From the NCBI RefSeq assembly GCF_001194135.2, contig NC_068995.1, positions 35,727,235 through 35,791,234 of the forward strand: a stretch of 64,000 nucleotides of DNA, written 5' to 3'. How positions within the stretch are numbered: position 1 is the stretch's first letter; every line of letters begins with the position of its first letter. A program made the translations under genes and the position numbers. The notes beneath the pieces are model-generated. The model made no database searches. It saw nothing but the letters and a program-made list of their open reading frames with translations, and had not been told where the DNA came from. Positions 19,410 through 51,376 of the stretch are shown here, in pieces. This DNA comes from Octopus bimaculoides. Lineage: Eukaryota.

Positions 19410-19445
19410 CTTTTTTCATGTCCTGCACTGAAGTTACTTCGCAAG
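19410..19445 (+). CDS. 36-nt exon (xFFMSCTEVTSQ), probable end of the signal peptide
   Basis: Acceptor tctatatttctactttcag, strong donor CAAG|gtaag, phase 1 matches the next exon. The 5' boundary is uncertain: the frame is open back to 19289 and other acceptors exist at 19331/19340. Confidence 0.6.
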
Positions 19446-20635
19446 GTAAGCTCTTGTTTTTTGCTTCTTTTGCTATTTGTTTCTATTTCCAAATAACTAT
19501 GTGGCGCTTCGTTGTTTTAACTGTTTGCTCTTTTTTCCTTTAGAGGGGGATGGGGTGGTCACATTCCGTTTTTATATGCTCACTTTTTTTTGTGTATCTA
19601 TTCTATTTTTAATTTGGCTTTTTCAGTAGAACCTTGTGACAGTTACACGGAAATAGACGCTTCATCAAGACGTATTACAGAGGATTATGATACTCACTGC
19701 GACAATACGCTATCAGAAAAATGGTACCGCTTTATCATTGGTAAACAGTCAGCCATTATTCCAACTCAGTGCATTAAGGTAAAAAAACAATTTTTTTCTT
19801 ATTTATTTTATGCATTAGCTCGAGTCGTTAAAACGCTACACAAGAGATCACCCTCACACAAACTAGGCCCGTAGTTGGCATGACATGTAACAGTTTTAAG
19901 TTGAACTACAATTCTCACTCTTCTTCAGAATTTTCAGAAGGTGAAATCAAAGATCTTTAACTAACTACATCCACGAACTAAAAATCAAATCCATACTTTG
20001 TAACCAGCAGGGGAAAATTCTACCTAGTACTAGACTGAATTCCCAAAAGTGAAAACCATGCAACAAGTGCACGAAAGATAGATCGAAAGTCATATTCTAT
20101 AGACACCTCACAGAAAAGAGCTACTGAAAAGACTACCACCTGCATGCACAGAACCTATAGGAATATGAAATTTCAATTTTTCTTGTTCACTAAACGGAAG
20201 CACTCATCTATACCACTTCTGCCCTCCCCTAAAGACATACTCTCTTTCATATCTGATTTTGCTGATCTTTCTTTCTTCCACTGAATCACTTTTCCTTTCC
20301 TTTCTTGTGTCTACACTACTTATTTCCTATTTACAGTCACTTCTACTCACATACTAGCCCAACATGTACCTACACACACACACAAACACGCACACACATA
20401 CACACAAACACATATATACATACATGCATACATACATACATACATACATACATACATACATACATAAATNNNNNNNNNNCACACACAAACACGCACACAC
20501 ATACACACAAACACATATATACATACATGCATACATACATACATACATACATACATACATACATACATACATAAATACATACATACATACATAGATACAT
20601 GCATCCATCCATCCATACATACATACATACATACA

Positions 20636-20671
<36 letters not shown>

Positions 20672-21213
20672 TGTATATAACTTACTTGGAAATGGATGCG
20701 TGGCGTTCAATCATATAATATAAATAATATTTAAATATATTTGCATACATACATACATATATGGACATACATATATATGTATATACACATGCATATATGG
20801 ACACAGGACACCACTGAACGTAGAAAACATGAAATACGGAAACAACATAAAACACGAAATACGAAAACATGGAATACGAACTTTTTTCGAACAACGAAAG
20901 AAACAAATGGAAAACAAGACAAGCAACATGAAAAAACGAGCCTTCATCAGTTGTCGGCTGTTTTTCTACTTCGTATTTCGAGCATACGAAGTAGAAAAAT
21001 AACCGACAACTGATGAAGGGCCGTTTTTCCATGTTGCTTGTCTTGTTTTCCATTTGTTTCTTTCGTGTTCGAAAAAAGGTCCTATTCCATGTTTTCGTAT
21101 TGTTTACGTTCTTTGGTGTCCTGTGCCCATATATGCATGTGCACAGGACACCATATATATGTATGCACATATACGCAGGCACATATATGTATGCATATGA
21201 TTTATATATTTTT

Positions 21214-21257
<44 letters not shown>

Positions 21258-21296
21258 GCACACGCATATATATATATATGTATGTATATATATGTG

Positions 21297-21327
<31 letters not shown>

Positions 21328-22988: not shown

Positions 22989-23023
<35 letters not shown>

Positions 23024-23236: not shown

Positions 23237-23303
<67 letters not shown>

Positions 23304-25700: not shown

Positions 25701-25792
<92 letters not shown>

Positions 25793-28700
25793 GCACATAC
25801 ATATATATATATATATAAAGTAACAAACTAAGGAAGAAAATTCCTTCGAAGGGGTGTGTAAAACATCCAATTCACTGCTACGTCAGTTGAATACCACATA
25901 AATATGGGTATAATTCAAATTACAAACAATATATTAAATAGAGAGATATAATTAACAATCGAATAATTTATTTATATTTATCTATAATATTATAATATAA
26001 CATAATATATTATGCATTTACAACATGAGATAGCATAAAAAAACATATTTAAAAAACCACCAGAAAAGCCAACAATTTGTTTCGACTTATAAACATTCTT
26101 TGATATATAAACAATTCAATTCTCTTTATAAGCCTCATCAGAGCCAACGGTTTGAGGATAGACCAAATTCCTCTCACATGGAATTTCGTCTATCTTCAAA
26201 CCACTGGCTCTGATGAGGCTTATATAAGGGAATTGAATTGTTTATATATCAAAAAATGTATGTAAGTCGAAACAAATTGTTGGCTTTCTTTGGTTTTTTT
26301 AATAATTATGTTATATTATAATATAAATAAATTATTGGATTGTTAAATGTATCTGTCTATTTAATTTAATGTTTATATGTATGTATGTATATATATATAT
26401 ATAGTTCAAAAACACAATAACAAAAAAACANNNNNNNNNNNNNNNNNNNNNNNNNNNNNNNNNNNNNNNNNNNNNNNNNNNNNNNNNNNNNNNNNNNNNN
26501 NNNNNNNNNNNNNNNNNNNNNNNNNNNNNNGCTGATAACTTAGAAAGCCTAATCGAAATATTTCTAACTAAATTATCAATTATACTTCTAGGGTGGTTAC
26601 TCCATCTACTTATAGATTTCAAATTAGTAGACGGTTTATGGTACGGTCTATACGTATCGTTTTTTGTATCAAGTGTCACATCTAAATAATTAGCTAGCGA
26701 AATATCATCGTAAGTGACACTCATTCCCATCCTACTAAAAAATCTAGATAACCTACCTTTAAGTCTCTGCAAACATTGGGTAGAATAATTCCTAATATAA
26801 ATAAGACAATCGTCCCTATATAAACCGCCCCTAACCATAGGGAATTGATCAGCCAATTCATACAAAATATAGGAACCCACAACATCCGCTATTTGAGCTG
26901 AGTCAGAACTTCCCATAGGAACATCGAAAGCATTAGGAGTATCTTTACGAATCCAAATCTTATCATTAAAAGAAATAAAGGACTTCCGAGCAGCTAACAC
27001 TACTTCTATTTCATCCCTAGTAAGCCCTGCCTTGTTATGGAAGAACCAAAGAGCCTTATTAAGTACGCTAGGGTTAATAGAAGCATAAAAATTTGAAATA
27101 TCAAACTGAATAAATTTAGCATTACATTTGTTTTCAATAGAACGAAACCACTCAATAACCTGATCAGTACTAGACCATAAATTCAAAAGTAATCCATCAA
27201 TAACTGTTAAACTCGAACTGCACTCTTCAAAACTTGCACTCAGAATAAGGACAAGGTAAAATTATTATCTACTTTTATAGCAAGTTGATGCAGGTAGTTT
27301 ATCCCGTACCCCTCCGACTTTTAATTCATGCAATTGAGAAAACCGCATTATTTGTGGGATAACCATATATATATATATATACAGGTTAGTTTTATTCGAC
27401 ATACCATCCTCTTAAACATGTGTGAGGAGTGTCAATGCAAAGAAAATAATCATAATTTTTATTAAACACTTTTGTTTTTTTTTCAGAACGATTTCTGTGG
27501 TACGAAACTGGGAATGTTTATCGATATGATGAATCAGTCTTTTCCCTCAACAGGAAACACGATTACCGTTACAGCATGTTCATCGTTCGATATCCTAGGA
27601 AAATGGGACTGCTGTGTGCTATCCAAGCGTATCGAAATGCGACGTTGTCCCGGAGATTTCTTTATCTATAATCTAAAAAAGACGGATAGATGTCCAGTCG
27701 CTTACTGTTCCATGTTGCGTAAGTACCAAAGAAACGTTTTCAAAGAATAACTTCCTAAAATATCAATCCAGAAAGCAAAATGCTTTGTTCTCTCCTTGAG
27801 CCTCTTCCCTGTTGTTTCTAAGGTTCCAATGACAATTGGTACCACCTCATTTTTTCTGCAACCCCATAATCTTCATCAGTGAAACATTGTCATGTATGTA
27901 CTTTCAAAATACTAGGTGACTGGAAGACGAAAGATTTTCAGTGAAAAATATAATTTAAAATATATTTAAAATAATGGCGGGTGAACATTTTAAATTATGC
28001 CTTCTACATGAAGAACATAGTTAAATAGAGTCTAACGTACTTAAATGTAGTATAGAAAAATTTGTTACTAAATTATTAGTTTAATGTCTTTAATGTTATA
28101 GGGGTTTTTTCATATTTATTAGTGATTTATATTTCATTTAGAATAACTTACTTCGAATATTCTAACATTACTGTTGATCTTTCAGGATTTTTCGGATATT
28201 ATTTTCTGAACGAATTTATAACTACCCAAATAAAAAGTAATACCTGACGCCATTTTGACTGTAAATGAAAAACATGACACAAATGATATGATGTAATAAA
28301 TGCTGGGCTGAACAATAAAAACAGCTAGAGTTCGCATACTTCTTCATTTCAAACCTAAAATCGGCTGTTAGTTCAGAAAATGAAAAGACAAAACAATGGT
28401 CTTGAAACATCGAAAATTAACTGATAAAGATTAAATATAAAAGAGTTTAATAATAGCATGTAAATATTGGGTTGAAAAAACCCTTTGTACAGAAAACTCG
28501 AAGGCTGCCTGTGTTCAATGGTAGACTGCCTGTCATGTCTACGTGAAATGTGAAATCGTATCCCACGGGCAACCATCGATTTTTTCTATCCAAAGGAGTC
28601 TTTTTTTTTCAACCCAGTATGCAAAGAGAATTTTCAATCGAATATTTACATGATATCATTTACAGATTTGCGTGATGTTCTTTGAGGACCAATGCCTCAA

Positions 28701-28886: not shown

Positions 28887-28923
<37 letters not shown>

Positions 28924-29824: not shown

Positions 29825-29872
<48 letters not shown>

Positions 29873-30978: not shown

Positions 30979-31040
<62 letters not shown>

Positions 31041-35052: not shown

Positions 35053-35084
<32 letters not shown>

Positions 35085-38000
35085 CGACACACACACAGGC
35101 ACATACACATGAGACACACACTCACATACATACATACATACATACATACATACATACATACATACATACATACATACATACATACATACATACCCCTGAG
35201 CCGCATCGGCAACGCAGACAAGACTTCCCTCACGTTCGATCTTCCGATGGCGAAAACTGTTGCTGAGAAGGAGAAGACAGTGGAAATCATTACGACGGGT
35301 CACGAGAAGGACCGTTTTACGGTGATGCTGGCTTTCATGAATGACGGAGGAATGCTGCCACCGTACGTCGTCTTCAAGCGGAAGACACTACCCAAAGACG
35401 CTAACTTTCCGGAAGGGATCATCGTTCGAGCCCAAGCGAAAGGTTGGATGGACCAGGTACTTAACGAGGAATAGCTTCAGGTAGCGTGGGGGTGGCGCAT
35501 CAGTGGATTGCATCAGAGAAGGAGTCTCCTGGTTCTGGATGCATTCAGATGTCACAAGTCAGAAGAAACCAAGGCGAAGATACGTCGTCTGAACGTCGAA
35601 GTGGCAATGATTCCCGGGGGAATAACATCCCTTTTTCAACCCTTTGATGTTGCAATCAACAAACCGTTTAAGGACCTTCTCAAGCACCGCTGGGAGGATT
35701 GGATGGCCAATGCACTGAAGGAGACGACAAAGACCGGGTGCACGAAGAAAGTCGACTTGGGGACGATCTGCGAGTGGATCCTGAAGGTCTGGCAGAAGAT
35801 TCCAGAAGACATCATCAGGCGGGCTTTCTTAAAGTGCTGCATATCCAACGCGCTCGACAGCACAGAAAATGACATCTCGTGGGAAGACGACGCCATCTCT
35901 CCCGACTCTTCTGACTCCAGCGATGACGACGATGAGCTGGTATATGCAGACGATCAACTCTACGAAGTCTTCAACGAGTTGCCTGATGACGAAGAGTTCT
36001 TAGGCTTTGAGTGAAGTCTCCACCCATTAGGGTCGGTCTTTTTAGGACCACACATTTTCAAGAAAGAATATAAACGTCGCAATATGAATAAATCATATAA
36101 ACAAACATAAAAAGACCTTCTCTTATTATCTCTTGCATTTAAAATCTGGACGTTATCTTCTTCTATTAATGATTCTGAATATTAATGATTGCAGTCAGAA
36201 ACGTTTAAGTATGAAATCATCATGAAATTGAATTTTGTATTCATCCCGCATTTCTCCCTTTTCATTAGTCCCAGTTTTTTCCCGGTTTCCCCCACGTTTT
36301 TCCCCCATCGGGGACCGAAAATCTGGGTGGGGGTTTATACACGAGTGCGGCTTATACACTGGCAAATCAAATACGGTAATTAAAGACAAGACAGAACATA
36401 GATTCAGCGGGACAAATGGACAGAGATATGGACATGTATGTACACACACATATACACACACTCACGCACACGCCCGCACGCACCTACGCACGTGCACGCA
36501 CGCACACACGCACGCACACACACACACACACACTTGTGGAAGAATTACATTGTAAGAATTTAACCCATTTCACTGGCGTGCAACAAACACTAGAATAACA
36601 CGTGATATACTTTGCGGAACAGCGAAATGGATTTCAGTTAAGATATTGGAATATCTTGCCTATTGTCTTTCCCATTAGTGTTTGGAACTTAGCACAATAC
36701 TCTAACAAAACACTAGCCAGCAAGTTTTAAAGCATTTAAAACCACCTTTCTATAGTATTTATATTTTTACAGAGATAGAATGGGCCGTTAATATTTAGAT
36801 ATTTTGCCAAGGACATAGTTCAGAAGTTCAGAATTGCTATAACAGGCATATGAAACTAAAGATTTCAGTTGACGACATAATATACTGCAGATTTATTTAA
36901 CTTCTCCGCTTTCGAGATACTTCAGTTCCAACTGTAATTATTTAATAACGTTAACACATTGCCTTCGGTAACTGCCTATTTGACGTTCGTAAAATCGAAT
37001 TTACATTAGATTCCATTTCATTTCAACTCGATTAGCATGTCTCGTAGATACCCTACTAATCCTCATTTTATTGTGAATCCAAACGAAATGCAGATAAGAA
37101 GATAATCAATGAAAAGCATACAATTGCGCCACTGGCTCGATCTTTGTCAGATTCAGCGAATTGTATCTTTTGGTGCGCCCGCCACGGATTGTTGAAGAAT
37201 TTTTACATGTACCTAGGGTGAAACTCTTTTTAAAATAAGTCTAACATATTTCCTCACTTTTTACCCGCTGTTCGCAGTGTGTATCATTTCTAATTATGAA
37301 ATGTTTTATTGGAATAAACTGTTTGGCTCACTATGATTTTACGAACGTCAAATAAGAAATTATCTTATTTTCATATCTTCTATGCTTTAATGATTTCTAG
37401 ATGCATATCGTTTACTCTATTATTTCATATCGTTTACTCTATTATTTCATAGAAAATGAGCTTCCTCACGATAATTATACAATCCTTCATGGTGCTGGGG
37501 TAAATGAAACTTCACCGTTTGTATCAACAAAAGATATGATTAAAGGTAAGTCTATCTCGAGAACTGATGGCTCTTGTAATAAAAGAAAGGCTATCTTTCG
37601 ATAAGGGTACACGGGAAACGAAACTATTCGGCAATTTTCCTAAAAAGTATTTATTTTCTTAATTTATTTTTTAGCCGATGTTTATGTAATTGTTTTGTGT
37701 ATGCATTTATGTATTTATTTGTGTATGTATATTTGTGTAAGTATTGTATATATGTGTGTATTTGTGTATGTGTAAACACATACATATACAAATATACATA
37801 CATGCATAAAAATACATGTACTAACATACACAAATATACGTACAAACACACATACACACACATATGTACACACAAAATACATAAATATAGCGATTCGACT
37901 TGGGGACGATTTGCGAGTGGATCCTGAAGGTCTGGGAGAAGATTCCAGAAGACATCATCAGGCGGGCTTTCTTGAAGTGCTGCATATCGGTTTATCATCT

Positions 38001-39080: not shown

Positions 39081-39111
<31 letters not shown>

Positions 39112-42100
39112 TAGGGTTCTCAAAACCTGAAAGAAAAAGGCTGATTAGAAGACTACAGATTCAAGCCATCAATGGAACTGTAAAGATATGTAAAACTTTC
39201 CAAAAATTTAGCACATAAATACATATGCATGCATCTAGACATAAAAACGCATCCATAAAACAAACATACAAATCTGCGCATACACTAACACCAAATACTG
39301 CACACACACACACATATGCACAAATACCTAGATGATGTTGATAAAAGTTCCAATGAAGGAGCCTTGAATCTATGTTAGAGTCCGGCTCTTTCTCTATGGA
39401 CAAGAAATACAGAAATGAAACTGATTGATAACATACATACATGTCTAGACATGCAACTGTATGCATGACAATACATACATAAAACACTCCAAATATTGCA
39501 GATATACACGCATACATGCAAAAATACCTAGTTGATGTTGTTAAAATTCCAATAAGGAGTCTTGGATCTAGGTTAGAAATCGGCTCTTTCTCTATTGGCA
39601 AGAAATCTTGAAACAAAACTGAATAATGACATATATACGCATGTGCATGCTCACACACGTACGCACGCATGCATACACACACACACACACACACACATAC
39701 ATACATACATACACACACACATGGTCAAAAGTCAACTCGTGACTGAGTACGACCACTTCCTAAACTCAGTAAGTCCGTACAAACGCTTCGAGAGTTCACG
39801 AAGTTGTTGTGCATGAATTTGCTTTGAGTAGATAAAGTGTTACACAAAAATGTTGCGTCCCCGTAACTTAGAGGTTCTGCAAAAAGTGATCGATAGAATA
39901 AGTACCAGGCTTACAAAGAAAATAAGACAAGAAAATAGTAAAATTATTATACGTGTTCTAATCCCCAAATCATCAAATGGATAAGATTTAAAGTTCCTGT
40001 GAATGACATTTGGATCCAAGTGATGGATCATTTAAGAGTTGTTCATGATTATTCAAAGTAGTGATTAATATATTGAACTTAAATATCTTACACGGCATGC
40101 CCATCAAACAAATATAGTTTTGCTTTTTGTTTTTTCGTTTTTTAATTATTATTGCTCTAATTTTTTTCTTTCAAGAAAATATATTAACCCTTTTTTTTTT
40201 CTTTTAGACCTAACGACTTTGGAGACGCCTGTCATAAGCTCAATAGGTTCAAATGCTCATAATTTAACTACTACAGAAATTCAGGCCCAAAATTTCGTCA
40301 CAGTAAATCAAACGGAAAAAGATGTACATGTAGAAAGTGCAACTAGATTTAATGTAACAACAGACTTGCCCAACAGCTCCGTTACAAATATCTTAGTCAC
40401 TAAAACAAAGAAAGGAAGACGTAATGCCACTGTGACTGCAGTGAAAACCACCACAGAAGACGAAGATTCAGCACTTAGAAGCTTCGGCAGTGGAGAAGAA
40501 AAGGAAACGGGTAATTATTGAATATTTCAATATTTATTGATCGATTAAGGCGGCGAAATGTTTAGCGGTATTTCGTCTGCCGTTACGTTCTGAGTTCAAA
40601 TTCCGCCGAGGTCGATAAATTAAGTACCAGTTACGCACTTGGGTCGATGTAACCGACTTAATCCCTTTGTCTGTCCTTGTTTGTCCCCTCTATGTTTAGC
40701 CCCTTGTGGGTAATAGGGAAATAAGAAACGTTAGCACGCTGGGTGAAATGCTTAGCGGTATTTCGTCTGTCTTTACGTTCTGAGTTCAAATTCCGCCGAA
40801 GTCGACTTCGCCTTTCATCCTTTCGGGGTCAATAAATTGAGTACCAGTTGCGTACTGGGGTCGATCTAATCGACTGNNNNNNNNNNNNNNNNNNNNNNNN
40901 NNNNNNNNNNNNNNNNNNNNNNNNNNNNNNNNNNNNNNNNNNNNNNNNNNNNNNNNNNNNNNNNNNNNNNNNNNNNNNNNNNNNNNNNNNNNNNNNNNCG
41001 GCGAAATGTTTAGCGGTATTTCGTCTGCCGTTACGTTCTGAGTTCAAATTCCGCCGAGGTCGATAAATTAAGTACCAGTTACGCACTTGGGTCGATGTAA
41101 CCGACTTAATCCCTTTGTCTGTCCTTGTTTGTCCCCTCTATGTTTAGCCCCTTGTGGGTAATAGGGAAATAAGAAACGTTAGCACGCTGGGTGAAATGCT
41201 TAGCGGTATTTCGTCTGTCTTTACGTTCTGAGTTCAAATTCCGCCGAAGTCGACTTCGCCTTTCATCCTTTCGGGGTCAATAAATTGAGTACCAGTTGCG
41301 TACTGGGGTCGATCTAATCGACTGACCCCGTCCCCAAAAATTTTGGGCCTTGTGCCTAGAGTAGAAAACAATATTTATTGATCGATTAAGGCGGCGAGCT
41401 GACAGAAACGTTAGCACGCCAGGCGAAATGCTTAGCCATATTTCGTCTGTCTTTACGTTCTGAGTTCAAATTCCGCTCAGGTCGACTTTGCGTTTCATCC
41501 TTTCGGGGTCGATTAAATAAGTACCAGTTACGCACTGGGGCCGATGTAATCGACTTAATTCCTCTGTCTGTCCTTGTTTGTCCCCTTTATGTTTATCCCC
41601 CTTGTGAGCAATAAAGAAAGAAAGAAATATTTATTGATCGATTGTGTTTCATAATTTTTCATCCATATGCTTGTGTCTCTCGGTTATTTATGCAACCTGG
41701 CAACCTAGTTTCAAACAAACTTAGTCATGGTTACACAAAAAGTGATGGTTACACAAAAAAGTGATGGTCAAACAAAAAGTGATGATTACAAACACGACTC
41801 ACGTCACAGAAAATCACCAAAGACTACTGGCTCGGTACCATTAATCTGATTTGCTCTGTGCCTTATTGATTTTCAACTCTATTTCTTTTATCTCCCTAAA
41901 TGTATATAAAATACTGTCTGAATCTGACTCTGACCTTAATATATACAAATTATCATGGCAAAATTAAAACTTGTCAATAATTTATAGTGGCTGGGTCTCC
42001 AAATCGTATGAATACGAGGGGTACCCAAAAGAAACTGAAATTTTGCAATACTTTTTTTATTCACTTACTTTTATGTCTACACTTTTACCGCCTTCAAAGT

Positions 42101-45100
42101 ATTCTCTATTTGAAGCAATGGCTTCGGTTCAGATGCGTTTACCACTGTTCGAAACAGCCCTGGAAATCTTGCCTTTTAACACCTCCGTCGTTTTCTTCTT
42201 CACCTCTTCCATATCTGCTAATTCCGTAGCACCAGCTTTCATCACCAGTGATGACGGTCCTCCAAGATCAGTTCATGAATTTTTGTGATGTTTTCATGGC
42301 AGCGTCTTTGTAAGCTGTTTGAAGCATGACAACTATTTCGGTCGCCGTTTGCCCCAGCAGAAAGTAAAATTTCACGGAAGCACGCTGTTCGTTCGTTTCA
42401 GCCATCGCAAAAATCGACTAACAAAAGAGAAGCACTGCCAAATAAATACGCACCACGTGGCAGTACGACATCACACGACGACGCCGGTCGGTAGACTGAT
42501 GCCTGAGGGTGGCGTTAAGTGGTGTCTAGCGGCGGAACCCTGAACGACAACAGACTTGTGCCACAGAGAACGTTTTCGGTTACTTTTGGGTGCTTCCTCG
42601 TATAGAGCGCCTTTGTTTACCCTCGGTTTCTGTAAAATTAAAGTTGGAGATAAACCTCCCGGATATGATACTGGTCTCTTGAAAGTAATTTTTCGTATGG
42701 GAGAACTGAGCTAAGTGCTTTAAACTACGGAATTCATCAGCACTGTTATAGTTTCCTGCATTGAATTTTACCACCAGGAACGAGAGAGTACGTATGTTGT
42801 CACTTGACCAGCTATAAATAACAACCAATCATTCATTTACGAAAATAATATCTTTGATAATGTAATCTTAAACTCTAAAACATGGGGTAGTCACGTTTGG
42901 AAAGCCTTTGATCTTAGGTTCGGTCAGATTTGACCCGGGCCAAAACAACGACAACAACAACCGAGATACAGACTTAGGTCTAACTGGACTCAAGCGAGCG
43001 TCAGTGACGACACAACAACTCCTCACCTCTTGTCCAGTGGATCGATTCTAGGATATACATACGTCTTGTCCTCTTTAGGACGCTTAGTGTAATATATTAT
43101 AAATTAGAAAATTCAATCCACAGATACAATACTATTTTTTCTTAGGGATTTTACATCTATCAATTATCTATCTATCTATGCCAGCTGACATTGTTTTAGC
43201 CTTCAATTTCAAAATTGATAAACAAAAGTTGTAGCGAAAGTATAGAGCGCTTCAAAAACAAAAACAAAAGAACAAACATAAAGCATAACGATAAAAATAC
43301 TTTTTGAGTTAATTCAAATAACATTGGAAAAAGAAACGAACCAATTTATCTGAGAACTTAGTATATATATAAATAAATAAATATATATATANNNNNNNNN
43401 NNNNNNNNNNNNNNNNNNNNNNNNNNNNNNNNNNNNNNNNNNNNNNNNNNNNNNNNNNNNNNNNNNNNNNNNNNNNNNNNNNNNNNNNNNNNNNNNNNNN
43501 NNNNNNNNNNNNNNNNNNNNNNNNNNNNNNNNNNNNNNNNNNNNNNNNNNNNNNNNNNNNNNNNNNNNNNNNNNNNNNNNNNNNNNNNNNNNNNNNNNNN
43601 NNNNNNNNNNNNNNNNNNNNNNNNNNNNNNNNNNNNNNNNNNNNNNNNNNNNNNNNNNNNNNNNNNNNNNNNNNNNNNNNNNNNNNNNNNNNNNNNNNNN
43701 NNNNNNNNNNNNNNNNNNNNNNNNNNNNNNNNNNNNNNNNNNNNNNNNNNNNNNNNNNNNNNNNNNNNNNNNNNNNNNNNNNNNNNNNNNNNNNNNNNNN
43801 NNNNNNNNNNNNNNNNNNNNNNNNNNNNNNNNNNNNNNNNNNNNNNNNNNNNNNNNNNNNNNNNNNNNNNNNNNNNNNNNNNNNNNNNNNNNNNNNNNNN
43901 NNNNNNNNNNNNNNNNNNNNNNNNNNNNNNNNNNNNNNNNNNNNNNNNNNNNNNNNNNNNNNNNNNNNNNNNNNNNNNNNNNNNNNNNNNNNNNNNNNNN
44001 NNNNNNNNNNNNNNNNNNNNNNNNNNNNNNNNNNNNNNNNNNNNNNNNNNNNNNNNNNNNNNNNNNNNNNNNNNNNNNNNNNNNNNNNNNNNNNNNNNNN
44101 NNNNNNNNNNNNNNNATATATATATATATATATATAATTTCAACCACTACAAAGTACTTTTTTAAATGTTAAAAGAGAATTCCATTTTTTACAGCCTGGA
44201 AAGAGAAATATTCCATACCCAATTCGACAGTTTCACCTGCTGCTTCCCATAGAACGAGTATAACACCAGTTATAACGGCTTTCGAGAAGACAGTAACGCC
44301 AAATCAAACAATTACGGTAACAGAAAAAGTTTTGTGAATGTCTTATAGTAAATATGCAAGCGTCTGAACAATGTTTACTGCGAACCTTTTTCTTTTATTG
44401 TCTTACAGTTGTACCTACACATATGTAGAGAAGGTTAGAATCACGTCGGTGTCACCAAATGTAACAAGTTATGTTACGATTAAATTGTTCAAACTCGTCG
44501 TAATATGTGTAAACATCTAAAGTTGATCTTTTTAGATATTTCCCTGGATCTGAACTCTTCTTATAAACCTTACCAAATCCCAACGAGAAATTTTCCTATA
44601 TACATAAACGGTCTTGTCACCCACTGTAGTATTTAAAAACCCGATAGCTAACATTAGTACCAGAGTTTCTAATTTCATTTTCTCTAAAGAAATTTTCGAG
44701 AAGGCAGCCTCCTACTACAACAATGCTCTAGCCAATAATATCTTTAAGGATAAATTAATATATAAACCCTCTAATGTTAATCGGAATAATAATAATAATA
44801 ATAATAAAATACTGGGCTAAACTAAATGCGAAAGAAATAGACAGAGAAAAATCCCAGCAATGGCTGAGAAGCTCAGGACTCAAAGCAGAGACTGAAGGAT
44901 TTTTAATTGCTGCACAAGACCAAAGCCTCCCCACCAGAAATTACCAAAAACACATAATGAAAAGAAATATAACAAGTAACTGTAGAATATGTGGAGATCG
45001 ACAAGAAACAATAAATCATATTATCTCTGGCTGCCCAGTCCTGGCTAAGAAGGAATATATTCACAGACACGACAGAGCTGGGACCTATATACACTGGAAG

Positions 45101-45753: not shown

Positions 45754-45808
<55 letters not shown>

Positions 45809-48800
45809 GATCTAAAATAGATCTAGAAAAAATGATTTGGTTCGCCCCTACCTTTTCCCTTAATGTAAGAACTAACATACGTAAAAGATTCCTGTATCTC
45901 CAAAACAAGCGTTTTCCAGAAAATCACAGGTACAGGAAAATATTTAGCTGGCACTCAGTGAAATTATCATGCAGCTGCTGTCCCAATATGAAAAGCATCA
46001 TTACACAAAAACAACACCAAGAGCCCACTTCCAGTTGTAACTGTCGAGACCCAGGAACCTGTTCACTCGACCAGGGATGTATGATTAAATCCATCATATA
46101 TAAAGTAAAAGTTACAGCGATAAGAATAGCTATATCGGACTATCTAAAGGCGAATTCAAAAATCGCTATGTTAATCACATATCTTCCTTCTGACACAGGG
46201 ACAAAAGTAAAGCTACTAAGTTGGCTAGCCATGTATGGGGTTTGAAGTCGAACGCCACACCACATAGGATAAAGTGGAAAACAGTCGAAAAATCCACACC
46301 ATATATATGTTAACGGAACAAAAAATAATGTAAGCTATGCGTAGCTGAAAAAACTCAGAGCCTTTTCAGATCTAAGAACTCTAATACACTGCTGAATTTG
46401 CGATCAAAAATTTTCAGCGGTTGTAAGCATATGGCTAAGTTCCTGTTGACGAATTGGAAAGTACCACCCTCTCTGAATTGAACAATTGTACCACAGACTC
46501 TAAGCCATTATCTTTTCAGTCTTATAATTTACGGTTTAAGGAGTAATAGTTCTAATCCTCTCCTTTTACTTCTTTCTGTTTTCTTTTTCGCTTTCCATTT
46601 TTTCAATTTTCCCCTTTTTATATCTACTTCTTTCTCGCCTTTTCTCGTTTTTTCCTTTATGCTATCGACCCATTTTTAGTTTGTTATGCTATGTGGGCAG
46701 TACCCGAAGCTTGTGCTAGGATACCAGACGTGTTAAAAAATACTGTCATGCTCTCAGTACATGAAACTTATATATATATATATATATACAGTAAAGCCCC
46801 GATATACGAATTAATTTGTTCCCGGATCGTAAAGCGAAAACTCGAAAGCAGAGCGATAATTTTCCATAGTAGCAATGTTATAAATCGTAATTCGTTCCCG
46901 GAAAAATATTTTGCCTATAAAATTTATAATACTCGTAAATAAATGGTAATAAAACAACTGTAGAATGTCAAGAATATTTCATGTAAATTGAAAAAGAATG
47001 GTAAGATCATTTATAATAAAAAATATTATTATTATAAACGTTGCTCTGGGTTCAGTCCCACTGCGTGTCACATTGGGCAAGTGTCTTCTACTATAGTCTG
47101 GGGCTAACCAAAGCCTTGTGAGTGGATTTGGTAGACAGAAACTGAAAAGTTCGTTGTGTGTGTGTGCGTATCGCCTCCAATTGACAACCGGTGTTGGTAT
47201 GTTTACGTTCCTCAAAACTAGCAGTTCGGCAACAGTACCCGATAGAATAGGTACAAAGCTTAGATCTATTTTAAAACGGGGGCCACATTTTTCATTAATG
47301 TTTTACGTAGTGTTTTTGGTACGGAAAGACTTTCAAACTTCGTATACTTATCTATTTTGTGTTATAGAACAGAAAAATATTTTTGTATTCGAATTTATTT
47401 CATGTAAAAAATTGTCTTATTTCGATAATTTCAACCAATCACTGACAAGTATTCAGTTGTTTATATTTACTCCTTTGGCTGATTAAGCGATGTAAAGCGT
47501 ATTTAATCTCCATACCTTCGTTTTATTTGCTTTTTTCATTTTAAATTTGCTTTAACCCTAACCCTAACCCTAACCCTAGGGTTAGAGTTAGGGTTAGGGT
47601 TAGGGTTGATTGCTTCAGAATCGTTTGTTTATGTAGTCGGCACTTAATGTATATCGGCTGAATGGACGTCAGTGATTGGTTGAAATTACAGAAATACGAC
47701 AACTTTAGCATGGAATAACTTATGGATTTCTTTTTTTTTTAAGAAGACTAAGAGAAAAAGATGTTTTATATGACACATTCTACCAGTGTTCCAAGTTTCA
47801 AAGTGTTTCGTTAATGAAAAATGTGGCCCCCGTTTTAAAAAAGATCCCAAAGCTTTTTTTAAAAAGTCGGTTTGTTCGACTAAAATTCTTCAAGGTTGTG
47901 CCCCAGCATGGTCACAGTCTGGCGTCTGAAACAAGTAAAAGAATACACACACACGCACACGCATATAAAATTATTTTCCCATTTGGTTTTCTCTTTTTAT
48001 CCTTAACGTCAATCCGTTCTGTTTCTCTCTCCCCAACAGGCTGAACCATCACAGGACATCTTCCAAGAATATTTGGCTCTGTTTATCATTTTAATGATAA
48101 TTGGGTTTCTTTGTCTTATACTCCTACTATCCAGCTGTATGTACCTCTATTGCCAACGCCATTCGGGCCATTGGGATCGGGCGTTAGCCGAACAGGTGAG
48201 ACAAATTGTTTCCTTTTTATTCTCAGTTTCCCCGACCTTTGAATATGAAAGCATATGTACGTGTGTGTGAAAGAGAGAGAGAGGGGGGAAAGGGAGAGAG
48301 AGGGAGAGAGAGAGAGAGAGGGGGGGAAGAATGTGTGGAGCAATTTTTTGTGTATGAGCGTGTGTGTGAGAGAGAGTTCTTTTTAGTCCCGTGTGTTTAT
48401 GAATTATATATAAAGCCTACATTCTAGACTGTGTAAATGTCTGCGTGTGTGTGTTTATGAGAGAAAGAGTGAGTGAGTGTGAGTGTGAGTGCGTGCGTAT
48501 GTATTCGTGTGTTTGTAGCAAGTGACACCTGACAACTTCCCCCAATGCTAACAACTATTCACAAAATCATTCGATTTATTATTTGCTTCATTACTGACAA
48601 GAGACGTCATCAATGATTTACGAACGAAAACAATGAACGATGTACAGAAACATCGTTTCGTAGTGTCTTTGTTTTGCTTTCAATGTAAACGAACGAATAT
48701 ATTTCCTCTTTTCTTCTCCGTCTACTACTCCTCATTATTATTTTCTATATTATCATCACCCACTTCATCCTCATCTTTCTCACTACTACAACCACAACCA

Positions 48801-49698: not shown

Positions 49699-49730
<32 letters not shown>

Positions 49731-51376
49731 GAGAGAGAGAGAGAGATTTTTTTATTAGTTTGGTAAGTGCCAATGTACAAAACACTTGGCCCTTGAATCA
49801 CTCTGTAATTTCGGCCAGTTATTAATAAAGGCCATTGCCAGTACCGTCTGACTGGCCTTCGTGCGGGTGACACGTAAAAGCACCCACTACACTATCTGAG
49901 TGGTTGGCGTTAGGAAGGGCATCCAGCTGTAGAAACTCTGCCAAATCAGATAGGAGCCTGGTGTAGCCATCTGGTTTCACCAGTCCTCAGTCAAATCGTC
50001 CAACCCATGCTAGCATGGAAAACGGACGTTAAACGATGATGATGATGAGGAAACATTTGAAAATTTATAACAAGTAACAGGTATATCCAGCCAGAACTTT
50101 CTTGGATCCAATAATATAGAGAGATACAGGTTGAAATGGTTCACCTTCTTGCATAGACAGTTGGTTATAGCAAGATGACTGCTTGATCTAAAATCAAATA
50201 CATGTATAATAGGAGGAATGAGAATGTAAATAAGGAACAATGGATTTAATGAATAAGTGAATGGGGGCTATTGACCCATTTACAAGTTCAACAGAATGGA
50301 AGCAGAAAAAGAAGTTGAATTTTTAATTCTAGCTGATAAAATATTCATAACAGATACAATGACTTAAAAATGTGTGCGTGACCTCACCTGGTTTAAGGAA
50401 AGCACAAAATATAGTTCCATATATGACATTGCCAGCAGATCTAATATCATTTAATGTGCCAAGAATCAGAACTAATTTTTATCTTGAATTTGTAGCATTT
50501 GAGCCAATAATTTTCTGATAAAATCATCTACTCTTAATATTTTTGCTTGAAATTTAAGTGAAATTCTATTTTAACTTGGATAGTACATCTGTGGTTCCAA
50601 TTACCTCTTGTTGATGAATTATTGATAATTTTGAGTAATTGGTTAAATTAACTTTCTTATTTAAACTGCTTGTGTCTGAGTTGTATTTGTAGGTATAAAA
50701 TTTAGTATTCAAATTATGTTCATCTGACCATAAACTTACTTTGATCTTTTCTGTTTGACTTTCACTTTTTGAAATTTTAGAATTAGGTAAAAATTTTCAA
50801 ATTTGGTATATTGATGTCATTTTTCATGCTGAATCTGATATTGTTACTCACTTGTTCCAGAAAAGATCCATTATTAACTGTCTAGATCATTAATTGATAA
50901 TATTACTCCTGCACTCTTTTTTTTATCATCATATGATTTATTTATACCTGATCCAGTTAGTCATTAAATGGTTTTCATTACAAGTATCATTTAAATATCA
51001 TACAACTTCTATAATTGACAATATTCATTTTTCTATCTATTGATGTTTCATTTTACAGTATCATGTGACTGTAGTCCCTCGACGAGATGCTTTGATTAAC
51101 GAAAGCCCCTACAGTGATGACGTTATCATTCATGATGAGAAAGAGGACAAATTGGGGAACAGCCTTGGCAGTTCTTATCATGGTGTCAATCCAGGTAACA
51201 ACCTATCCTACTCAAATAGCATCAAAGCAATCAATGACCTGAATAATTTGACCATGAGAAGCCATCCTAATGACTTCAACTCGCAGCCACTTGATGGAAC
51301 TGAGGGCCTAGTCATACCTATTGACCAGTTCAGACCTGAAAAAGACACTATGAATATTGAAGACACAATTTTATGA
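19410..51376 (+). CDS. Spliced gene, 5'-incomplete: D8C/D10C (UMOD/GP2/OIT3-like) domain + mucin-like stalk + TM + cytoplasmic tail, ~470 aa. Exons 19410-19445, 19627-19778, 27487-27718, 37453-37545, 40208-40510, 44195-44316, 48040-48195, 51059-51376
   Basis: Hand splicing: every junction is GT..AG with matching phases (1,0,1,1,1,0,0). The exons sum to 1412 nt with no internal stop and end at TGA 51374-51376. Confidence 0.88.
19627..19778 (+). CDS. D10C N-terminal exon: (V)EPCDSYTEIDASSRRITEDYDTHCDNTLSEKWYRFIIGKQSAIIPTQCIK
   Basis: ttttcag|..AAG|gtaaaa. The PC-x-Y...CD...WYRF...IP..C pattern is typical of the UMOD/GP2 decoy module. Confidence 0.92.
20786..21142. repeat. Long foldback inverted repeat (~170-bp arms, 7-nt loop TTCGAGC at 20977-20983)
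   Basis: The arms are visibly reverse-complementary. Single-arm copies occur at ~14460-14510 and ~29290-29415. Confidence 0.9.
21530..21860 (-). mobile_element. AT-rich dispersed repeat, probably a PLE terminal repeat; homologous copy at 29885-30070
   Basis: Both places share GATAAAA(A)TCCAAATTT..TGAAAATCCAC..CACATATAG..AATAAGTAAA. Confidence 0.55.
22642..22902. repeat. Near-perfect inverted repeat (~105-bp arms, ~50-bp spacer)
   Basis: TTAATTAATTATTGGATTCTTACAGCTG... against ...CAGCTGTAAGAATCCAATAATTAATTAA. Confidence 0.92.
23600..25470 (+). mobile_element. Penelope-like element: degenerate RT + GIY-YIG + terminal repeat
   Basis: MGSYDGADICDL..IYRDDAL..VNFIDVSL..YKPNRKP; IWFTSP; later CN.CP.N.AC...IIYEA, then WKILAKC..NGRG. 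Confidence 0.92.
25920..26385. repeat. Long inverted repeat of a PLE terminal repeat (loop TCTCACAT 26172-26179) with a hammerhead-like core in each arm
   Basis: The arms are reverse-complementary and each has CTGATGAGGCTTATA...T(A/G)TAAGTCGAAAC. Confidence 0.85.
26531..27240 (-). mobile_element. Penelope-like RT with an uninterrupted frame of about 218 aa before a gap
   Basis: FIQFDISNFYASI, PMGSSDSAQIAD, GLYRDDCL, YLDVTLD, YRPYHKP. Confidence 0.93.
27487..27718 (+). CDS. D8C core exon: NDFCGTKLGMFIDMMNQSFPSTGNTITVTACSSFDILGKWDCCVLSKRIEMRRCPGDFFIYNLKKTDRCPVAYCSML
   Basis: tttcag|..TTGC|gtaagt. The CGT...AC...CC...CPG.FFIYNL...C..AYC motif is diagnostic of D8C. Confidence 0.93.
30351..30580. 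repeat. Inverted repeat (~105-bp arms) of a dispersed family also at 11385-11420, 16460-16535 and 30815-30875
   Basis: GCACTAATCAGCACCAGTATTGCTAGAAATAA / TTATTTCTAGCAACACTGGTGCTGATTAGTGC. Confidence 0.85.
33400..34800 (+). mobile_element. Dong/R4-clade LINE RT remnant
   Basis: KWKSPGND.I; WLTQGITYVLPK..NYKP; NLSTA; ISHFFYIDDLKLHAK..MEFDLHKCAK; many stops. Confidence 0.88.
35192..36380 (+). mobile_element. pogo (DDE_1) transposon, 5'-truncated, with the right TIR
   Basis: IGNADKT..TGHEKDRFTVML..GWMD; one stop at 35472-35474; LLVLDAFRCH..IPGG.T..QPFDV.INKPFK. The end reads ..CGGCTTATACAC..AATACGG|TA. Confidence 0.93.
37453..37545 (+). CDS. Symmetric phase-1 stalk exon (Q)NELPHDNYTILHGAGVNETSPFVSTKDMIK
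   Basis: ttatttcatag|..AAAG|gtaagt, 93 nt, in frame between its neighbours, two N-glycosylation sequons (NYT, NET). Confidence 0.75.
40208..40510 (+). CDS. Thr/Ser-rich stalk exon (D)LTTLETP...TKKGRRNATV...EDEDSALRSFGSGEEKET
   Basis: cttttag|..ACGG|gtaatt, 303 nt, five sequons (NLT, NQT, NVT, NSS, NAT). Confidence 0.88.
40529..41643 (+). repeat. Tandem cluster of SINE-A copies with an 18-bp target repeat present three times
   Basis: AATATTTATTGATCGATT at 40529, 41370 and 41626. Confidence 0.85.
42015..42600 (-). mobile_element. Internally deleted mariner with both TIRs
   Basis: TA|CGAGGGGTACCCAAAAG ... CTTTTGGGTGCTTCCTCG|TA. The minus frame reads QRASVKFYFLLGQTATEIVVMLQTAYKD. Confidence 0.85.
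44195..44316 (+). CDS. Stalk exon (A)WKEKYSIPNSTVSPAASHRTSITPVITAFEKTVTPNQTIT
   Basis: catttttttacag|..ACG|gtaaca. This phase 1-to-0 exon is needed to join exon 40208-40510 to the TM exon. Confidence 0.82.
44480..46560 (+). mobile_element. Degenerate Penelope-like element interrupted by a Dong LINE
   Basis: FLDISLDL..YKPY; NISTRVS..EIFEKAASYYNNAL; resumes with IWFAPTFS..SCNCRDP..IIYKVKV. Confidence 0.85.
44805..45810 (+). mobile_element. Dong/R4 LINE 3' end (CCHC knuckle + RLE region) with an (AAT)n tail
   Basis: WLRSSGLKAETEGFLIAAQDQSLPTRNY..CRICG..ETINHIISGC..YIHRHD; PIIVGALG; ends in (AAT)n. Confidence 0.92.
47262..47847. mobile_element. Merlin-like MITE inserted in a SINE-B, 8-bp TSD CAAAGCTT, containing inverted telomere-like repeats
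   Basis: ~27-bp TIR (A/G)GATCT.TTTTAAAACGGGGGCCACATT; TSD at 47254-47261 and 47848-47855. Confidence 0.7.
48040..48195 (+). CDS. Transmembrane exon AEPSQDIFQEYLALFIILMIIGFLCLILLLSSCMYLYCQRHSGHWDRALAEQ
   Basis: ctctctccccaacag|..CAG|gtgaga, hydrophobic run of about 23 aa, juxtamembrane Cys. Confidence 0.9.
49833..50047 (+). mobile_element. SINE/LINE-tail family D ending in (GAT)n. Other copies: 54440-55080, 57270-57402, 58295-58799 (-)
   Basis: Shared GGTTGGCGTTAGGAAGGGCATCCAGCTGTAGAAAC..CCCATGCTAGCATGGAA..(GAT)n; RTE-like tail. Confidence 0.8.
51059..51376 (+). CDS. Terminal exon, cytoplasmic tail YHVTVVPRRDALINESPYSDD...EKDTMNIEDTIL*
   Basis: ttttacag| acceptor in phase 0; coincides with supplied ORF 51065..51376. 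Confidence 0.87.
   Translation, partial: YHVTVVPRRDALINESPYSDDVIIHDEKEDKLGNSLGSSYHGVNPGNNLSYSNSIKAINDLNNLTMRSHPNDFNSQPLDGTEGLVIPIDQFRPEKDTMNIEDTIL

What the first reader, a model, noticed from the sequence alone, without database searches (positions are those of the whole stretch)
19410..51376. Uncharacterised receptor: stand-alone D10C decoy domain on a glycan stalk with a signalling-type tail
In vertebrates the D8C/D10C module sits in GPI-anchored or secreted ZP-filament proteins (uromodulin, GP2) and acts as a decoy for the bacterial adhesin FimH (established). Here all 10 Cys are visible, but there is no ZP or EGF domain. Instead there is a ~175-aa stalk with nine sequons, one TM helix, and a ~120-aa cytoplasmic tail. 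This layout suggests a microbial-recognition or adhesion receptor able to signal (inference).
Basis: partly seen in the sequence, partly recalled or inferred. Interest (0 to 1): 0.78.

Follow-up and report, generated by a model that had tools for sequence, protein, structure and literature searches.

The report
Octopus membrane protein with uromodulin-type head
This is a real octopus gene, shared with other octopuses and cuttlefish, for a single-pass membrane glycoprotein. Its outer tip is the same fold as the bacteria-trapping domain of human uromodulin and GP2, but it lacks the parts that make that domain a decoy, and its function is still unknown.

Summary
Eight canonical GT-AG exons on the + strand (19410-51376) splice into residues 13-481 of Octopus bimaculoides RefSeq LOC106883806, annotated "uncharacterized protein". 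All N gaps in the span are intronic. The first exon (MITKYIFLFPL) lies 12 kb upstream of the window.

The protein has:
- one D10C domain, with all ten Cys aligned to the GP2 crystal structure (E 6e-12);
- a stalk of about 180 aa with nine sequons;
- one TM helix;
- a 120-aa tail.

No ZP or EGF was found in the window, in the gap-free O. vulgaris locus, or in spliced cuttlefish mRNAs.

The "decoy" reading is not supported. [quoted passage not shown] Neither groove sequon (UMOD N275, GP2 N65) is present in any of the seven cephalopod orthologues.

TM plus tail is the most conserved part (dN/dS 0-0.08). It ends in IEDT[IV]L, a class I PDZ-ligand pattern, and has no detectable relative outside cephalopods among 1.84 billion proteins. 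The D10C head evolves near neutrality (0.68 and 1.40).

My best reading is a scaffold-anchored surface recognition or adhesion glycoprotein. This is a new architectural variant of a known domain family, and its function is untested.

The parts
19410..19445 (+). Exon 2 of the gene (my E1). It encodes the end of the signal peptide, (A)FFMSCTEVTSQ, and ends in phase 1.
   Evidence: Acceptor cag|CT and donor AAG|gtaagc. Matches RefSeq residues 13-23. The first exon is outside the window.
19627..19778 (+). D10C N-terminal half (Cys 1-3: EPC, HCD, QCIK). A NAGNAG acceptor at 19627 or 19630 gives isoforms X1 (with Val) and X2.
   Evidence: tblastn is 100% identical to P0001. This is the fastest-evolving coding exon (dN/dS 1.43 against O. 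vulgaris).
27487..27718 (+). D10C C-terminal half (Cys 4-10) with the NQS sequon. Ends in phase 1.
   Evidence: Aligns with GP2/UMOD through C10. The CIK|N intron position is shared with the bivalve Solemya velum.
37453..37545 (+). Stalk exon NELPHDNYTILHGAGVNETSPFVSTKDMIK (two sequons).
   Evidence: I missed this exon in my first model. I found it through the RefSeq protein. Splice sites tag|AA and AAG|gtaagt.
40208..40510 (+). Main stalk exon, Thr/Ser-rich, with five sequons.
   Evidence: O. vulgaris has a 25-aa in-exon insertion here. dN/dS 0.91.
44195..44316 (+). Membrane-proximal stalk exon (two sequons). Its acceptor is 79 bp after the gap at 43392-44115.
   Evidence: It aligns weakly with the alpha/beta juxtamembrane domain of the cuttlefish orthologues.
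48040..48195 (+). Extracellular juxtamembrane QDIFQEY, the TM helix, and the start of the tail (YCQRHSGHWDRALAEQ).
   Evidence: Hydropathy peak at 334-361. 94-100% identical across coleoids. No non-synonymous change in either species pair.
51059..51376 (+). Cytoplasmic tail exon (105 aa) ending IEDTIL, plus the TGA stop codon.
   Evidence: dN/dS 0.09. Motifs.

Best explanation
Shown. The span is most of a functional, transcribed, coleoid-conserved gene, O. bimaculoides LOC106883806. It encodes a type I membrane glycoprotein built as signal peptide, one D10C domain, an N-glycosylated Thr/Ser-rich stalk of about 180 aa, one TM helix and a 120-aa cytoplasmic tail.

Inferred.
- The D10C head is held away from the membrane on the stalk and acts as a protein-level ligand-binding or adhesion surface. 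Its two variable loops (C1-C2 and C4-C5) change quickly between close species, while the Cys frame and the C7-C10 core do not change.
- The invariant TM and juxtamembrane helix, and the conserved last ~28 residues ending in a class I PDZ-ligand pattern (T-[IV]-L-COOH), tie the protein to membrane partners and a sub-membrane PDZ scaffold. That would fix its location, possibly relay occupancy, or drive endocytosis through the conserved S-x-Y-x-G-V motif.
- It is not a UMOD/GP2-type glycan decoy.
For: Gene and architecture.
- Canonical splice sites, and a translation identical to RefSeq.
- Orthologues in O. vulgaris, Argonauta hians, Acanthosepion pharaonis, Sepia esculenta and one unnamed decapodiform-like transcript.
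- Intron-free full-length ORFs in 10 independent SRA runs. At least two of these are S. esculenta larval RNA-seq.

D10C head.
- Pfam hit above the cut-off.
- phmmer against GP2 7p6r gives E 5.9e-12, with all ten Cys aligned.
- Foldseek hits with E below 0.1 are only GP2 and UMOD, for both models.

Selective regime.
- O. bimaculoides against O. vulgaris: D10C 0.68, stalk 1.09, TM plus tail 0.08.
- Cuttlefish pair: D10C 1.40, TM 0, tail 0.04.
- Head against TM plus tail, Nd:Sd, Fisher p 1.2e-6.
- TM is 94-100% identical between octopods and cuttlefish, against 46-50% for D10C and about 20% for the stalk.

Tail.
- C-terminal IEDT[IV]L and S-x-Y-x-G-V are present in all seven orthologues.
- The class I PDZ consensus [S/T]-x-Phi-COOH is established knowledge.
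Against: - There are no expression, localisation or binding data for any member.
- The PDZ-ligand and YxxPhi/ITIM-like motifs are short and of low specificity.
- dN/dS above 1 in the head is not significant (p 0.34). Relaxed constraint explains it as well as adaptive change does.
- The AF2 models are of low confidence (mean pLDDT 40 and 45). I could not test whether the variable loops form one surface.
- A frozen TM helix could reflect oligomerisation or trafficking rather than signalling.
Confidence: 0.45

Rival explanations
1. This is a microbial-recognition molecule that works like UMOD/GP2. The D10C presents a glycan that traps bacterial lectins (or binds microbes directly), and the tail signals the encounter.
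For: - Clear D10C homology to the FimH-binding module.
- The head evolves fast and the tail is frozen, as in many immune receptors.
- One sequon equivalent to GP2 N122/UMOD N232 is kept in octopods.
- Other D10C proteins (zebrafish omcins) are linked to antibacterial defence.
Against: - The decoy function in UMOD/GP2 needs the beta-hairpin plus a high-mannose glycan in the hairpin/D10C groove. The hairpin is absent, and both groove positions are non-sequons in all seven orthologues.
- The retained sequon corresponds to the solvent-exposed complex-type glycan that is not the FimH target, and it is lost in most cuttlefish sequences.
- There is no polymerising ZP module to give multivalency.
- The tail has no ITAM, TIR, death or kinase domain.
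Confidence: 0.17
2. A transmembrane-mucin or podocalyxin-like glycocalyx protein. The glycosylated stalk is the working part (anti-adhesive or barrier, apical-domain organiser). The tail links to PDZ/ERM scaffolds. The D10C is only a cap.
For: - The stalk is 27% Ser+Thr with nine sequons and evolves neutrally (dN/dS 1.09).
- The C-terminus is [E]-D-T-x-L, like podocalyxin DTHL.
- Cuttlefish orthologues carry an alpha/beta juxtamembrane domain, the position where TM mucins carry SEA.
- Pfam CD34_antigen gives sub-threshold hits in three decapodiform orthologues (E 0.0026-0.037).
Against: - All homology tests were negative. CD34_antigen scores 14-16 bits against a cut-off of 26.3, and there is no hit in octopods.
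- BLASTP, hhalign (probability 1.9%) and shuffle tests (p 0.43 and 0.15) against the human podocalyxin tail were negative.
- There is no Pfam SEA hit. Foldseek ranks SEA 46th, at E 0.54.
- The stalk is short and proline-poor (5%) for a mucin.
- The invariant Cys frame and the frozen C7-C10 core of D10C argue that the head is functional.
Confidence: 0.2
3. A precursor of a soluble D10C protein. The ectodomain is shed by stalk cleavage, or an intron-3-retaining transcript yields a secreted D10C-only product. The secreted form would be the active agent.
For: - UMOD and GP2 are released from the membrane (established).
- Reading through the exon-3 donor gives only 11 more codons (RKYQRNVFKE) before a stop, in both Octopus species.
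- The Solemya model ends 20 aa after C10.
Against: - The strongest purifying selection is on the TM and tail, which makes no sense for a mere pro-region.
- The dibasic KKGRR in the stalk is not conserved in O. vulgaris (TRKGGR).
- No transcript evidence for intron retention was available.
- The conserved read-through may only reflect the close relatedness of the two species.
Confidence: 0.08
4. Not a real gene: chance ORFs, a pseudogene, or a mis-joined annotation across assembly gaps.
For: - Seven gaps in the span remain unresolved in the public assembly.
- An older UniProt model (A0A0L8I7S4) fused a repeat-derived first exon to the stalk exons.
Against: - Eight exons with canonical sites and an intact frame.
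- A colinear orthologue at a gap-free locus.
- Full-length spliced mRNAs in cuttlefish.
- dN/dS of 0-0.08 on the TM and tail.
Confidence: 0.02

Closest known systems
D10C (D8C) domain of human GP2 and uromodulin, the 'decoy module' (PDB 7P6R/7P6S/7P6T, 7PFP)
   Same: - Homologous domain. phmmer E 5.9e-12 to GP2 and 2.8e-9 to UMOD.
- All ten Cys align, as do the D/E-P-C start, the W-Y-R-F motif, the CC pair and the terminal YC.
- These are the only significant Foldseek hits.
- The sequon equivalent to GP2 N122/UMOD N232 is kept in octopods.
   Different: - No beta-hairpin precedes D10C.
- There is no sequon at the GP2 N65 or UMOD N275 groove positions.
- There are no EGF domains, no ZP module, no GPI anchor and no polymerisation.
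- Instead there is a stalk, a TM helix and a 120-aa conserved tail.
Other D10C proteins: OIT3/LZP, VWDE, zebrafish omcins
   Same: They carry D10C domains outside UMOD and GP2. VWDE shows that D10C is not strictly tied to a ZP module.
   Different: OIT3 and the omcins keep the EGF plus ZP module, and the omcins are GPI-anchored. VWDE is a secreted VWD/EGF protein. As far as I could find, none has the D10C-stalk-TM-tail layout.
CD34/podocalyxin sialomucins and PDZ-binding transmembrane mucins
   Same: The resemblance is in layout only: glycosylated stalk, single TM helix, and a tail ending in acidic-D-T-x-L (podocalyxin DTHL binds NHERF PDZ domains). A juxtamembrane folded domain is present in the decapodiform orthologues.
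   Different: - No demonstrable homology.
- The head is a Cys-rich D10C rather than a mucin domain.
- The stalk is short and proline-poor.
Solemya velum KAL5015505.1 (bivalve D8C protein)
   Same: It is the closest non-cephalopod D10C, at 48-53% identity, with the same intron position inside the domain.
   Different: The model ends 20 aa after C10. No cephalopod-type TM or tail was found within 10 kb downstream. Its architecture is unknown.

Membership tests
D10C / D8C_UMOD domain family (Pfam PF23283) | Profile match above the curated gathering score | tested here: met
   34.4 bits against a cut-off of 27, covering profile positions 1-88 of 88. All six orthologues tested also pass.
D10C / D8C_UMOD domain family (Pfam PF23283) | Ten conserved cysteines in register with GP2 C1-C10 | tested here: met
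   The phmmer alignment to 7p6r pairs every Cys. All ten are invariant in 8 sequences, including Solemya.
D10C / D8C_UMOD domain family (Pfam PF23283) | Three-dimensional fold like the GP2 crystal structure | tested here: inconclusive
   Foldseek top hits are only GP2 and UMOD (E 3.8e-7 to 5.5e-7, TM 0.5-0.66). However, rmsd is 6-7 A and the models are of low confidence (pLDDT 50-75 in the domain).
D10C / D8C_UMOD domain family (Pfam PF23283) | Disulfide connectivity C1-C8, C2-C9, C3-C6, C4-C10, C5-C7 | not testable with these tools
   Needs a solved structure or mass spectrometry. The connectivity is taken from PMC8930769.
UMOD/GP2 FimH decoy module | Disulfide-bonded beta-hairpin (Cx-Cy) packed against D10C | tested here: not met
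   Only about 4-10 residues lie between the signal peptide and C1. There is no Cys pair there, and squid and cuttlefish have no Cys there at all.
UMOD/GP2 FimH decoy module | N-glycan sequon in the hairpin/D10C groove (UMOD N275 or GP2 N65) | tested here: not met
   GP2 CQNYT corresponds to CDSYT. UMOD YNLT corresponds to YNLK (octopus) or YKLK/YHLR (decapodiforms). None of the 7 orthologues has a sequon at either site.
UMOD/GP2 FimH decoy module | EGF plus ZP polymerisation module and GPI anchor or release | tested here: not met
   - No Pfam EGF or ZP in any orthologue.
- No EGF-like Cys pattern on the + strand of the window or of the gap-free O. vulgaris locus.
- A TM helix plus a 120-aa tail takes the place of a GPI signal.
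UMOD/GP2 FimH decoy module | Binding of type-1 fimbrial lectin through high-mannose glycan | not testable with these tools
   Needs glycoproteomics and binding assays.
CD34/podocalyxin family (Pfam PF06365) | Profile match above the gathering score | tested here: not met
   No hit in the octopod proteins. The decapodiform orthologues score about 14-16 bits against a cut-off of 26.3.
CD34/podocalyxin family (Pfam PF06365) | Homologous cytoplasmic tail | tested here: not met
   - BLASTP gave no tail alignment.
- hhalign probability is 1.9%.
- Shuffle tests give p 0.43 and 0.15.
- The human tail was recalled from memory. Its numbering was cross-checked against PMC12922080.
CD34/podocalyxin family (Pfam PF06365) | C-terminal D-T-x-L PDZ ligand | tested here: met
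   IEDTIL or IEDTVL in all 7 orthologues and in fragment P0010. This is a motif only, not evidence of descent.
SEA-domain transmembrane mucins | SEA domain next to the membrane | tested here: not met
   - No Pfam SEA hit.
- The cuttlefish juxtamembrane beta-alpha-beta-beta-alpha domain gives only generic ferredoxin-like Foldseek hits, with SEA 2e7v at rank 46 and E 0.54.
- In octopus the region is predicted to be disordered.
ITAM/ITIM-type immune receptors | ITAM (YxxL/I x6-12 YxxL/I), or ITIM ([SIVL]xYxx[IVL]), in the tail | tested here: inconclusive
   No orthologue has an ITAM. One ITIM-like S-x-Y-x-G-V is conserved in all 7, but the pattern is common by chance and no phosphorylation data exist.

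The most novel reading that the evidence does not exclude
A coleoid-specific receptor family. A rapidly diversifying D10C head binds ligands directly as a protein surface rather than as a glycan presenter. It is coupled to a lineage-restricted, invariant TM-juxtamembrane-tail module that signals or sorts. That would make it a previously unrecognised class of invertebrate recognition receptor (immune, self/non-self or gamete). It would also be the first evidence for what a D10C fold does outside ZP filaments.
Probability: 0.2. Interest if true: 0.7.

Novelty: new variant of a known kind. Interest (0 to 1): 0.42.

Why it matters
D10C is medically important because UMOD mutations there cause kidney disease. 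Its only described role is as a scaffold that presents a glycan on ZP filaments. Here the same fold is used alone, at the tip of a membrane-anchored stalk, without the hairpin or the groove glycan. That gives a natural test of whether the fold has a binding activity of its own.

The contrast between a near-neutrally evolving head and an almost invariant TM and tail marks the gene as a candidate surface recognition molecule. Octopods and cuttlefish have no amino-acid change in the TM segment. Cephalopod immune and adhesion receptors are poorly known.

The gene is already annotated as uncharacterised, and nothing here shows function. The value is as a lead, not a discovery.

Tried and rejected
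1. First gene model. It lacked the 93-bp stalk exon at 37453-37545 and had several off-by-one splice coordinates. I corrected both against the RefSeq protein.

2. Signal-peptide first exon. I searched the window for MITKYIFLFPL by peptide pattern and by blastn with the O. vulgaris exon. It is absent. It lies 12.1 kb upstream of the window. The intronic 'IFLLS' resemblance just upstream of 19410 is also present in O. vulgaris and was not pursued further.

3. Resolving the gaps. I hoped the chromosome-level assembly would do this. It contains the identical N runs, so I used the gap-free O. vulgaris locus instead.

4. CD34/podocalyxin homology. This was prompted by the DTxL end and a weak Pfam hit. 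I rejected it as homology after BLASTP, hhalign and shuffle tests.

5. SEA identity of the cuttlefish juxtamembrane domain. Not supported.

6. Exhaustive profile search with the juxtamembrane, TM and tail region against 1.84 billion representatives. It returned only cephalopod sequences plus one weak 81-aa TM-only hit.

7. The search for homologous proteins timed out three times on the podocalyxin query and once on the D10C alignment. This exhausted the cap. As a result, the planned survey of D10C architectures across molluscs could not be run.

8. Look-up of isoform X2 failed. Isoform X1 worked.

9. Literature searches for the gene identifiers and for D8C in molluscs found nothing relevant.

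10. Solemya locus. No cephalopod-type tail lies within 10 kb downstream.

Full report
**What the window is.** The 64-kb window is AT-rich (35.5% GC) and has 14 N runs. It is 100% identical to Octopus bimaculoides chromosome CM046615.1 of assembly GCA_001194135.2, and it carries the same gaps.

**Checking the observation.**
- My first splice model was open throughout but lacked one exon.
- A protein search returned RefSeq "uncharacterized protein LOC106883806" isoforms X1 and X2 (481 and 480 aa). It also returned orthologues from O. vulgaris (505 aa), Argonauta hians (510 aa), cuttlefish-type transcripts (541-545 aa) and a bivalve D8C protein.
- Mapping these proteins back to the window showed the missing 93-bp stalk exon at 37453-37545.
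- The final eight exons are 19410-19445, 19627-19778, 27487-27718, 37453-37545, 40208-40510, 44195-44316, 48040-48195 and 51059-51376. They translate exactly to residues 13-481 of isoform X1.
- Isoform X2 uses the second AG of a NAGNAG acceptor, at 19630.
- The first exon (MITKYIFLFPL) is not in the window. It lies 12.1 kb upstream of window position 1, beyond a 5.9-kb gap. In O. vulgaris the same exon is 30.5 kb upstream of the second exon.

**Gap test.**
- Seven N runs fall inside the span. The six listed by the program are joined by 45170-45493.
- All seven are inside introns, and the exon phases match across each gap-bearing intron.
- The gaps are unresolved in the public assembly, so I used independent evidence.
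- The O. vulgaris locus has no N at all. Its protein is colinear with the window's exons, apart from a 25-aa insertion inside the main stalk exon.
- The cuttlefish orthologue occurs as an uninterrupted 1.6-kb ORF on 2.3-2.7-kb contigs from ten different sequencing runs. Papers identify at least two of these runs as Sepia esculenta larval RNA-seq. These contigs are therefore spliced mRNAs.
- None of these proteins has an EGF or ZP match.
- A 6-Cys EGF pattern scan of the + strand of the O. vulgaris gene range and of the whole window found nothing.
- A cassette exon specific to O. bimaculoides and hidden in a gap cannot be absolutely excluded, but nothing suggests one.

**Anatomy (isoform X1 numbering).**
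- Residues 1 to about 23 form a hydrophobic N-terminus. I infer a signal peptide.
- Residues 26-148 form the D10C domain, with Cys at 27, 48, 72, 78, 105, 116, 117, 128, 143 and 148.
- Residues 149 to about 333 form the stalk. It is 27% Ser+Thr and 5% Pro, with nine sequons.
- Residues 334-361 are the only strongly hydrophobic segment. AF2 predicts it as one long helix running into the cytoplasm as far as residue 375.
- Residues 362-481 form the cytoplasmic tail.
- Pfam finds D8C_UMOD above threshold and nothing else.

**The head is a true D10C.**
- A sequence search of the PDB hits the GP2 decoy-module crystal structure (E 5.9e-12) and uromodulin (E 2.8e-9).
- Every one of the ten Cys is in register, along with the D/E-P-C start, W-Y-R-F, the CC pair and the terminal YC.
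- The AF2 models are poor because only eight sequences were available (mean pLDDT 40 and 45).
- Even so, the only Foldseek hits with E below 0.1 are GP2 and UMOD D10C, for both the octopus and the cuttlefish model.
- The intron that splits the domain (CIK|N) is at the same place in the bivalve Solemya velum.

**It is not the decoy module.**
- According to Stsiapanava et al. 2022 (PMC8930769), the FimH decoy is a bipartite module. A Cx-Cy disulfide beta-hairpin packs against D10C. The high-mannose glycan that FimH binds (UMOD N275, GP2 N65) emerges from the groove between them.
- In the cephalopod proteins no hairpin can exist. Only a few residues precede C1, and there is no Cys pair.
- The GP2 N65 position reads CDSYT in octopus and CKNYQ or CKNYR in cuttlefish.
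- The UMOD N275 position reads YNLK in octopus and YKLK or YHLR in the decapodiform-type sequences.
- None of these is a sequon in any of the seven orthologues.
- The one sequon kept in octopods (NQS) aligns with GP2 N122/UMOD N232. That is the exposed complex-type glycan, which is not the FimH target.
- There is also no ZP module to make a multivalent filament.
- The paper lists VWDE as a D10C protein, so D10C is not strictly bound to ZP proteins.
- The zebrafish omcins, which are linked to antibacterial defence, keep EGF plus ZP and a GPI anchor.

**The TM and tail are the most conserved part and are lineage-restricted.**
- Identity between octopus and the cuttlefish-type proteins is 94% for the QDIFQEY-TM-juxtamembrane block. 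It is 60% for the tail, 46-50% for D10C and about 20% for the stalk.
- A profile of the juxtamembrane, TM and tail region was searched exhaustively against 1.84 billion representative proteins. It found only cephalopod sequences and one weak 81-aa TM-only hit.
- The tail has no Pfam domain and no ITAM.
- It has one S-x-Y-x-G-V motif, which is both ITIM-like and YxxPhi. It has an invariant C-terminal block, DG-x-EGLV-x-PIDQ-x-x-PEKD...IEDT[IV]L.
- The last three residues fit the class I PDZ-ligand consensus (the consensus is established knowledge).

**Selective regime.**

| Region | O. bimaculoides vs O. vulgaris | S. esculenta vs a close cuttlefish |
|---|---|---|
| D10C | 0.68 (first D10C exon 1.43, second 0.37) | 1.40 |
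| Stalk | 1.09 | 0.59 |
| Juxtamembrane domain | not computed | 0.20 |
| TM | pooled with tail | 0 |
| Tail | 0.08 (TM plus tail together) | 0.04 |

- These are Nei-Gojobori dN/dS values.
- The head and the TM plus tail differ strongly in Nd:Sd (pooled Fisher p 1.2e-6).
- dN/dS above 1 in the head is not significant (p 0.34).
- Against the more distant decapodiform sequence, synonymous sites are saturated (dS 1.25 in the TM block), yet there is no amino-acid change in 36 TM and juxtamembrane codons.
- By eye, replacements in both pairs cluster between C1-C2 and in the C4-C5 loop. The C7-C10 stretch (RCPG-F-IY-L...DRCPV-YC) does not change (sequences).

**A lead that failed.**
- The DTxL end, the glycosylated stalk and a weak Pfam CD34_antigen hit in the decapodiform orthologues (E 0.0026-0.037, 14-16 bits against a cut-off of 26.3) suggested kinship with podocalyxin.
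- I recalled the human podocalyxin tail from memory. I checked its numbering (C483, R495, G532, W538, N544, DTHL 555-558) against PMC12922080.
- BLASTP found no tail alignment, hhalign gave 1.9% probability, and shuffle tests gave p 0.43 and 0.15.
- The resemblance is one of layout, not of demonstrable descent.
- The cuttlefish proteins have an extra beta-alpha-beta-beta-alpha domain next to the membrane (pLDDT 65-74). It gives only generic ferredoxin-like structural hits and no SEA match.
- In octopods the corresponding stretch aligns weakly and is predicted to be disordered.

**Most likely mechanism.**
- Shown: this is a transcribed, conserved type I membrane glycoprotein with a D10C head, a glycan stalk, and an invariant TM and tail.
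- Inferred: the head is a protein-level binding surface whose loops change quickly. The stalk holds it above the glycocalyx. The TM and juxtamembrane helix and the C-terminal PDZ ligand tie it to membrane partners and a cortical scaffold, with possible endocytic or phosphotyrosine control at the conserved Tyr.
- I give this about 0.45.
A podocalyxin or mucin-like glycocalyx role gets about 0.2. A shed or secreted D10C precursor gets about 0.08. An artefact gets about 0.02.

**Novelty and verdict.**
- The gene is already in RefSeq and UniProt as uncharacterised. UniProt labels the orthologues "UMOD/GP2/OIT3-like D8C domain-containing protein".
- I found no paper on it.
- The domain is known. 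The D10C-stalk-TM-tail architecture and the cephalopod-restricted tail are not described in anything I could reach.
- I rate it a new variant of a known kind, of moderate interest.

Noticed in passing
window 19624-19632: There is a NAGNAG tandem acceptor (cagTAG) at the start of the first D10C exon. It explains RefSeq isoforms X1 (481 aa, with Val24) and X2 (480 aa).
   Followed up: yes
window 27719-27753: Reading through the donor of the second D10C exon adds only RKYQRNVFKE before a stop. O. vulgaris has the near-identical RKYQRNFFKE followed by a stop. Intron retention would give a secreted D10C-only protein of about 160 aa. No transcript evidence was available.
   Followed up: partly
window 35753-35845 and 37890-38036 (+): Two copies of a repeat encode RLGDDLRVDPEGLGEDSRRHHQAGFLEVLHI. 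The older UniProt model A0A0L8I7S4 used the second copy as a false first exon and so missed the D10C domain.
   Followed up: partly
window 26531-27186 (-), 34566-34817 (+), 35109-36014 (+), 44774-45169 (+): The introns contain transposon remnants. There are two reverse-transcriptase fragments (RVT_1), a pogo/Tigger-type DDE_1 transposase split into two ORFs, and a zf-RVT fragment. They help explain why intron 3 is 7.7 kb here, against about 1.7 kb in O. vulgaris.
   Followed up: partly
window 14594-15064 (-): A 156-aa ORF looks like the C-terminal part of a mariner/Tc1-type transposase (...FMHDNAPLHSAKA...), judged by eye. Pfam gave no hit at E 0.01 or below.
   Followed up: partly
window ~60091-61376 and beyond (-): The next annotated gene, about 8.7 kb downstream on the opposite strand, encodes a 1117-aa Tudor-domain protein. 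It was not examined.
   Followed up: no
window 19394-19409; L001 40498-40513: The last bases of intron 1, read in frame with the next exon, give IFLLS, which resembles the end of the exon-0 peptide IFLFPL. The same is true in O. vulgaris. This may be chance or a trace of an older continuous first exon.
   Followed up: no
L004-L015 (cuttlefish/decapodiform mRNAs), protein residues ~300-385: Decapodiform orthologues have an extra folded alpha/beta domain next to the membrane. Octopods appear to have lost it or let it degenerate into stalk. It is under purifying selection (dN/dS 0.20) and has no identifiable family.
   Followed up: partly
window, many sites (e.g. 20305-20710, 35000-35300, 39024-39718): Abundant microsatellite-like (TATG/CATA)n and (CA)n tracts create long spurious ORFs of the YIHTYIHT or CMYVCMYV type on both strands. 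Several gaps are flanked by them.
   Followed up: no
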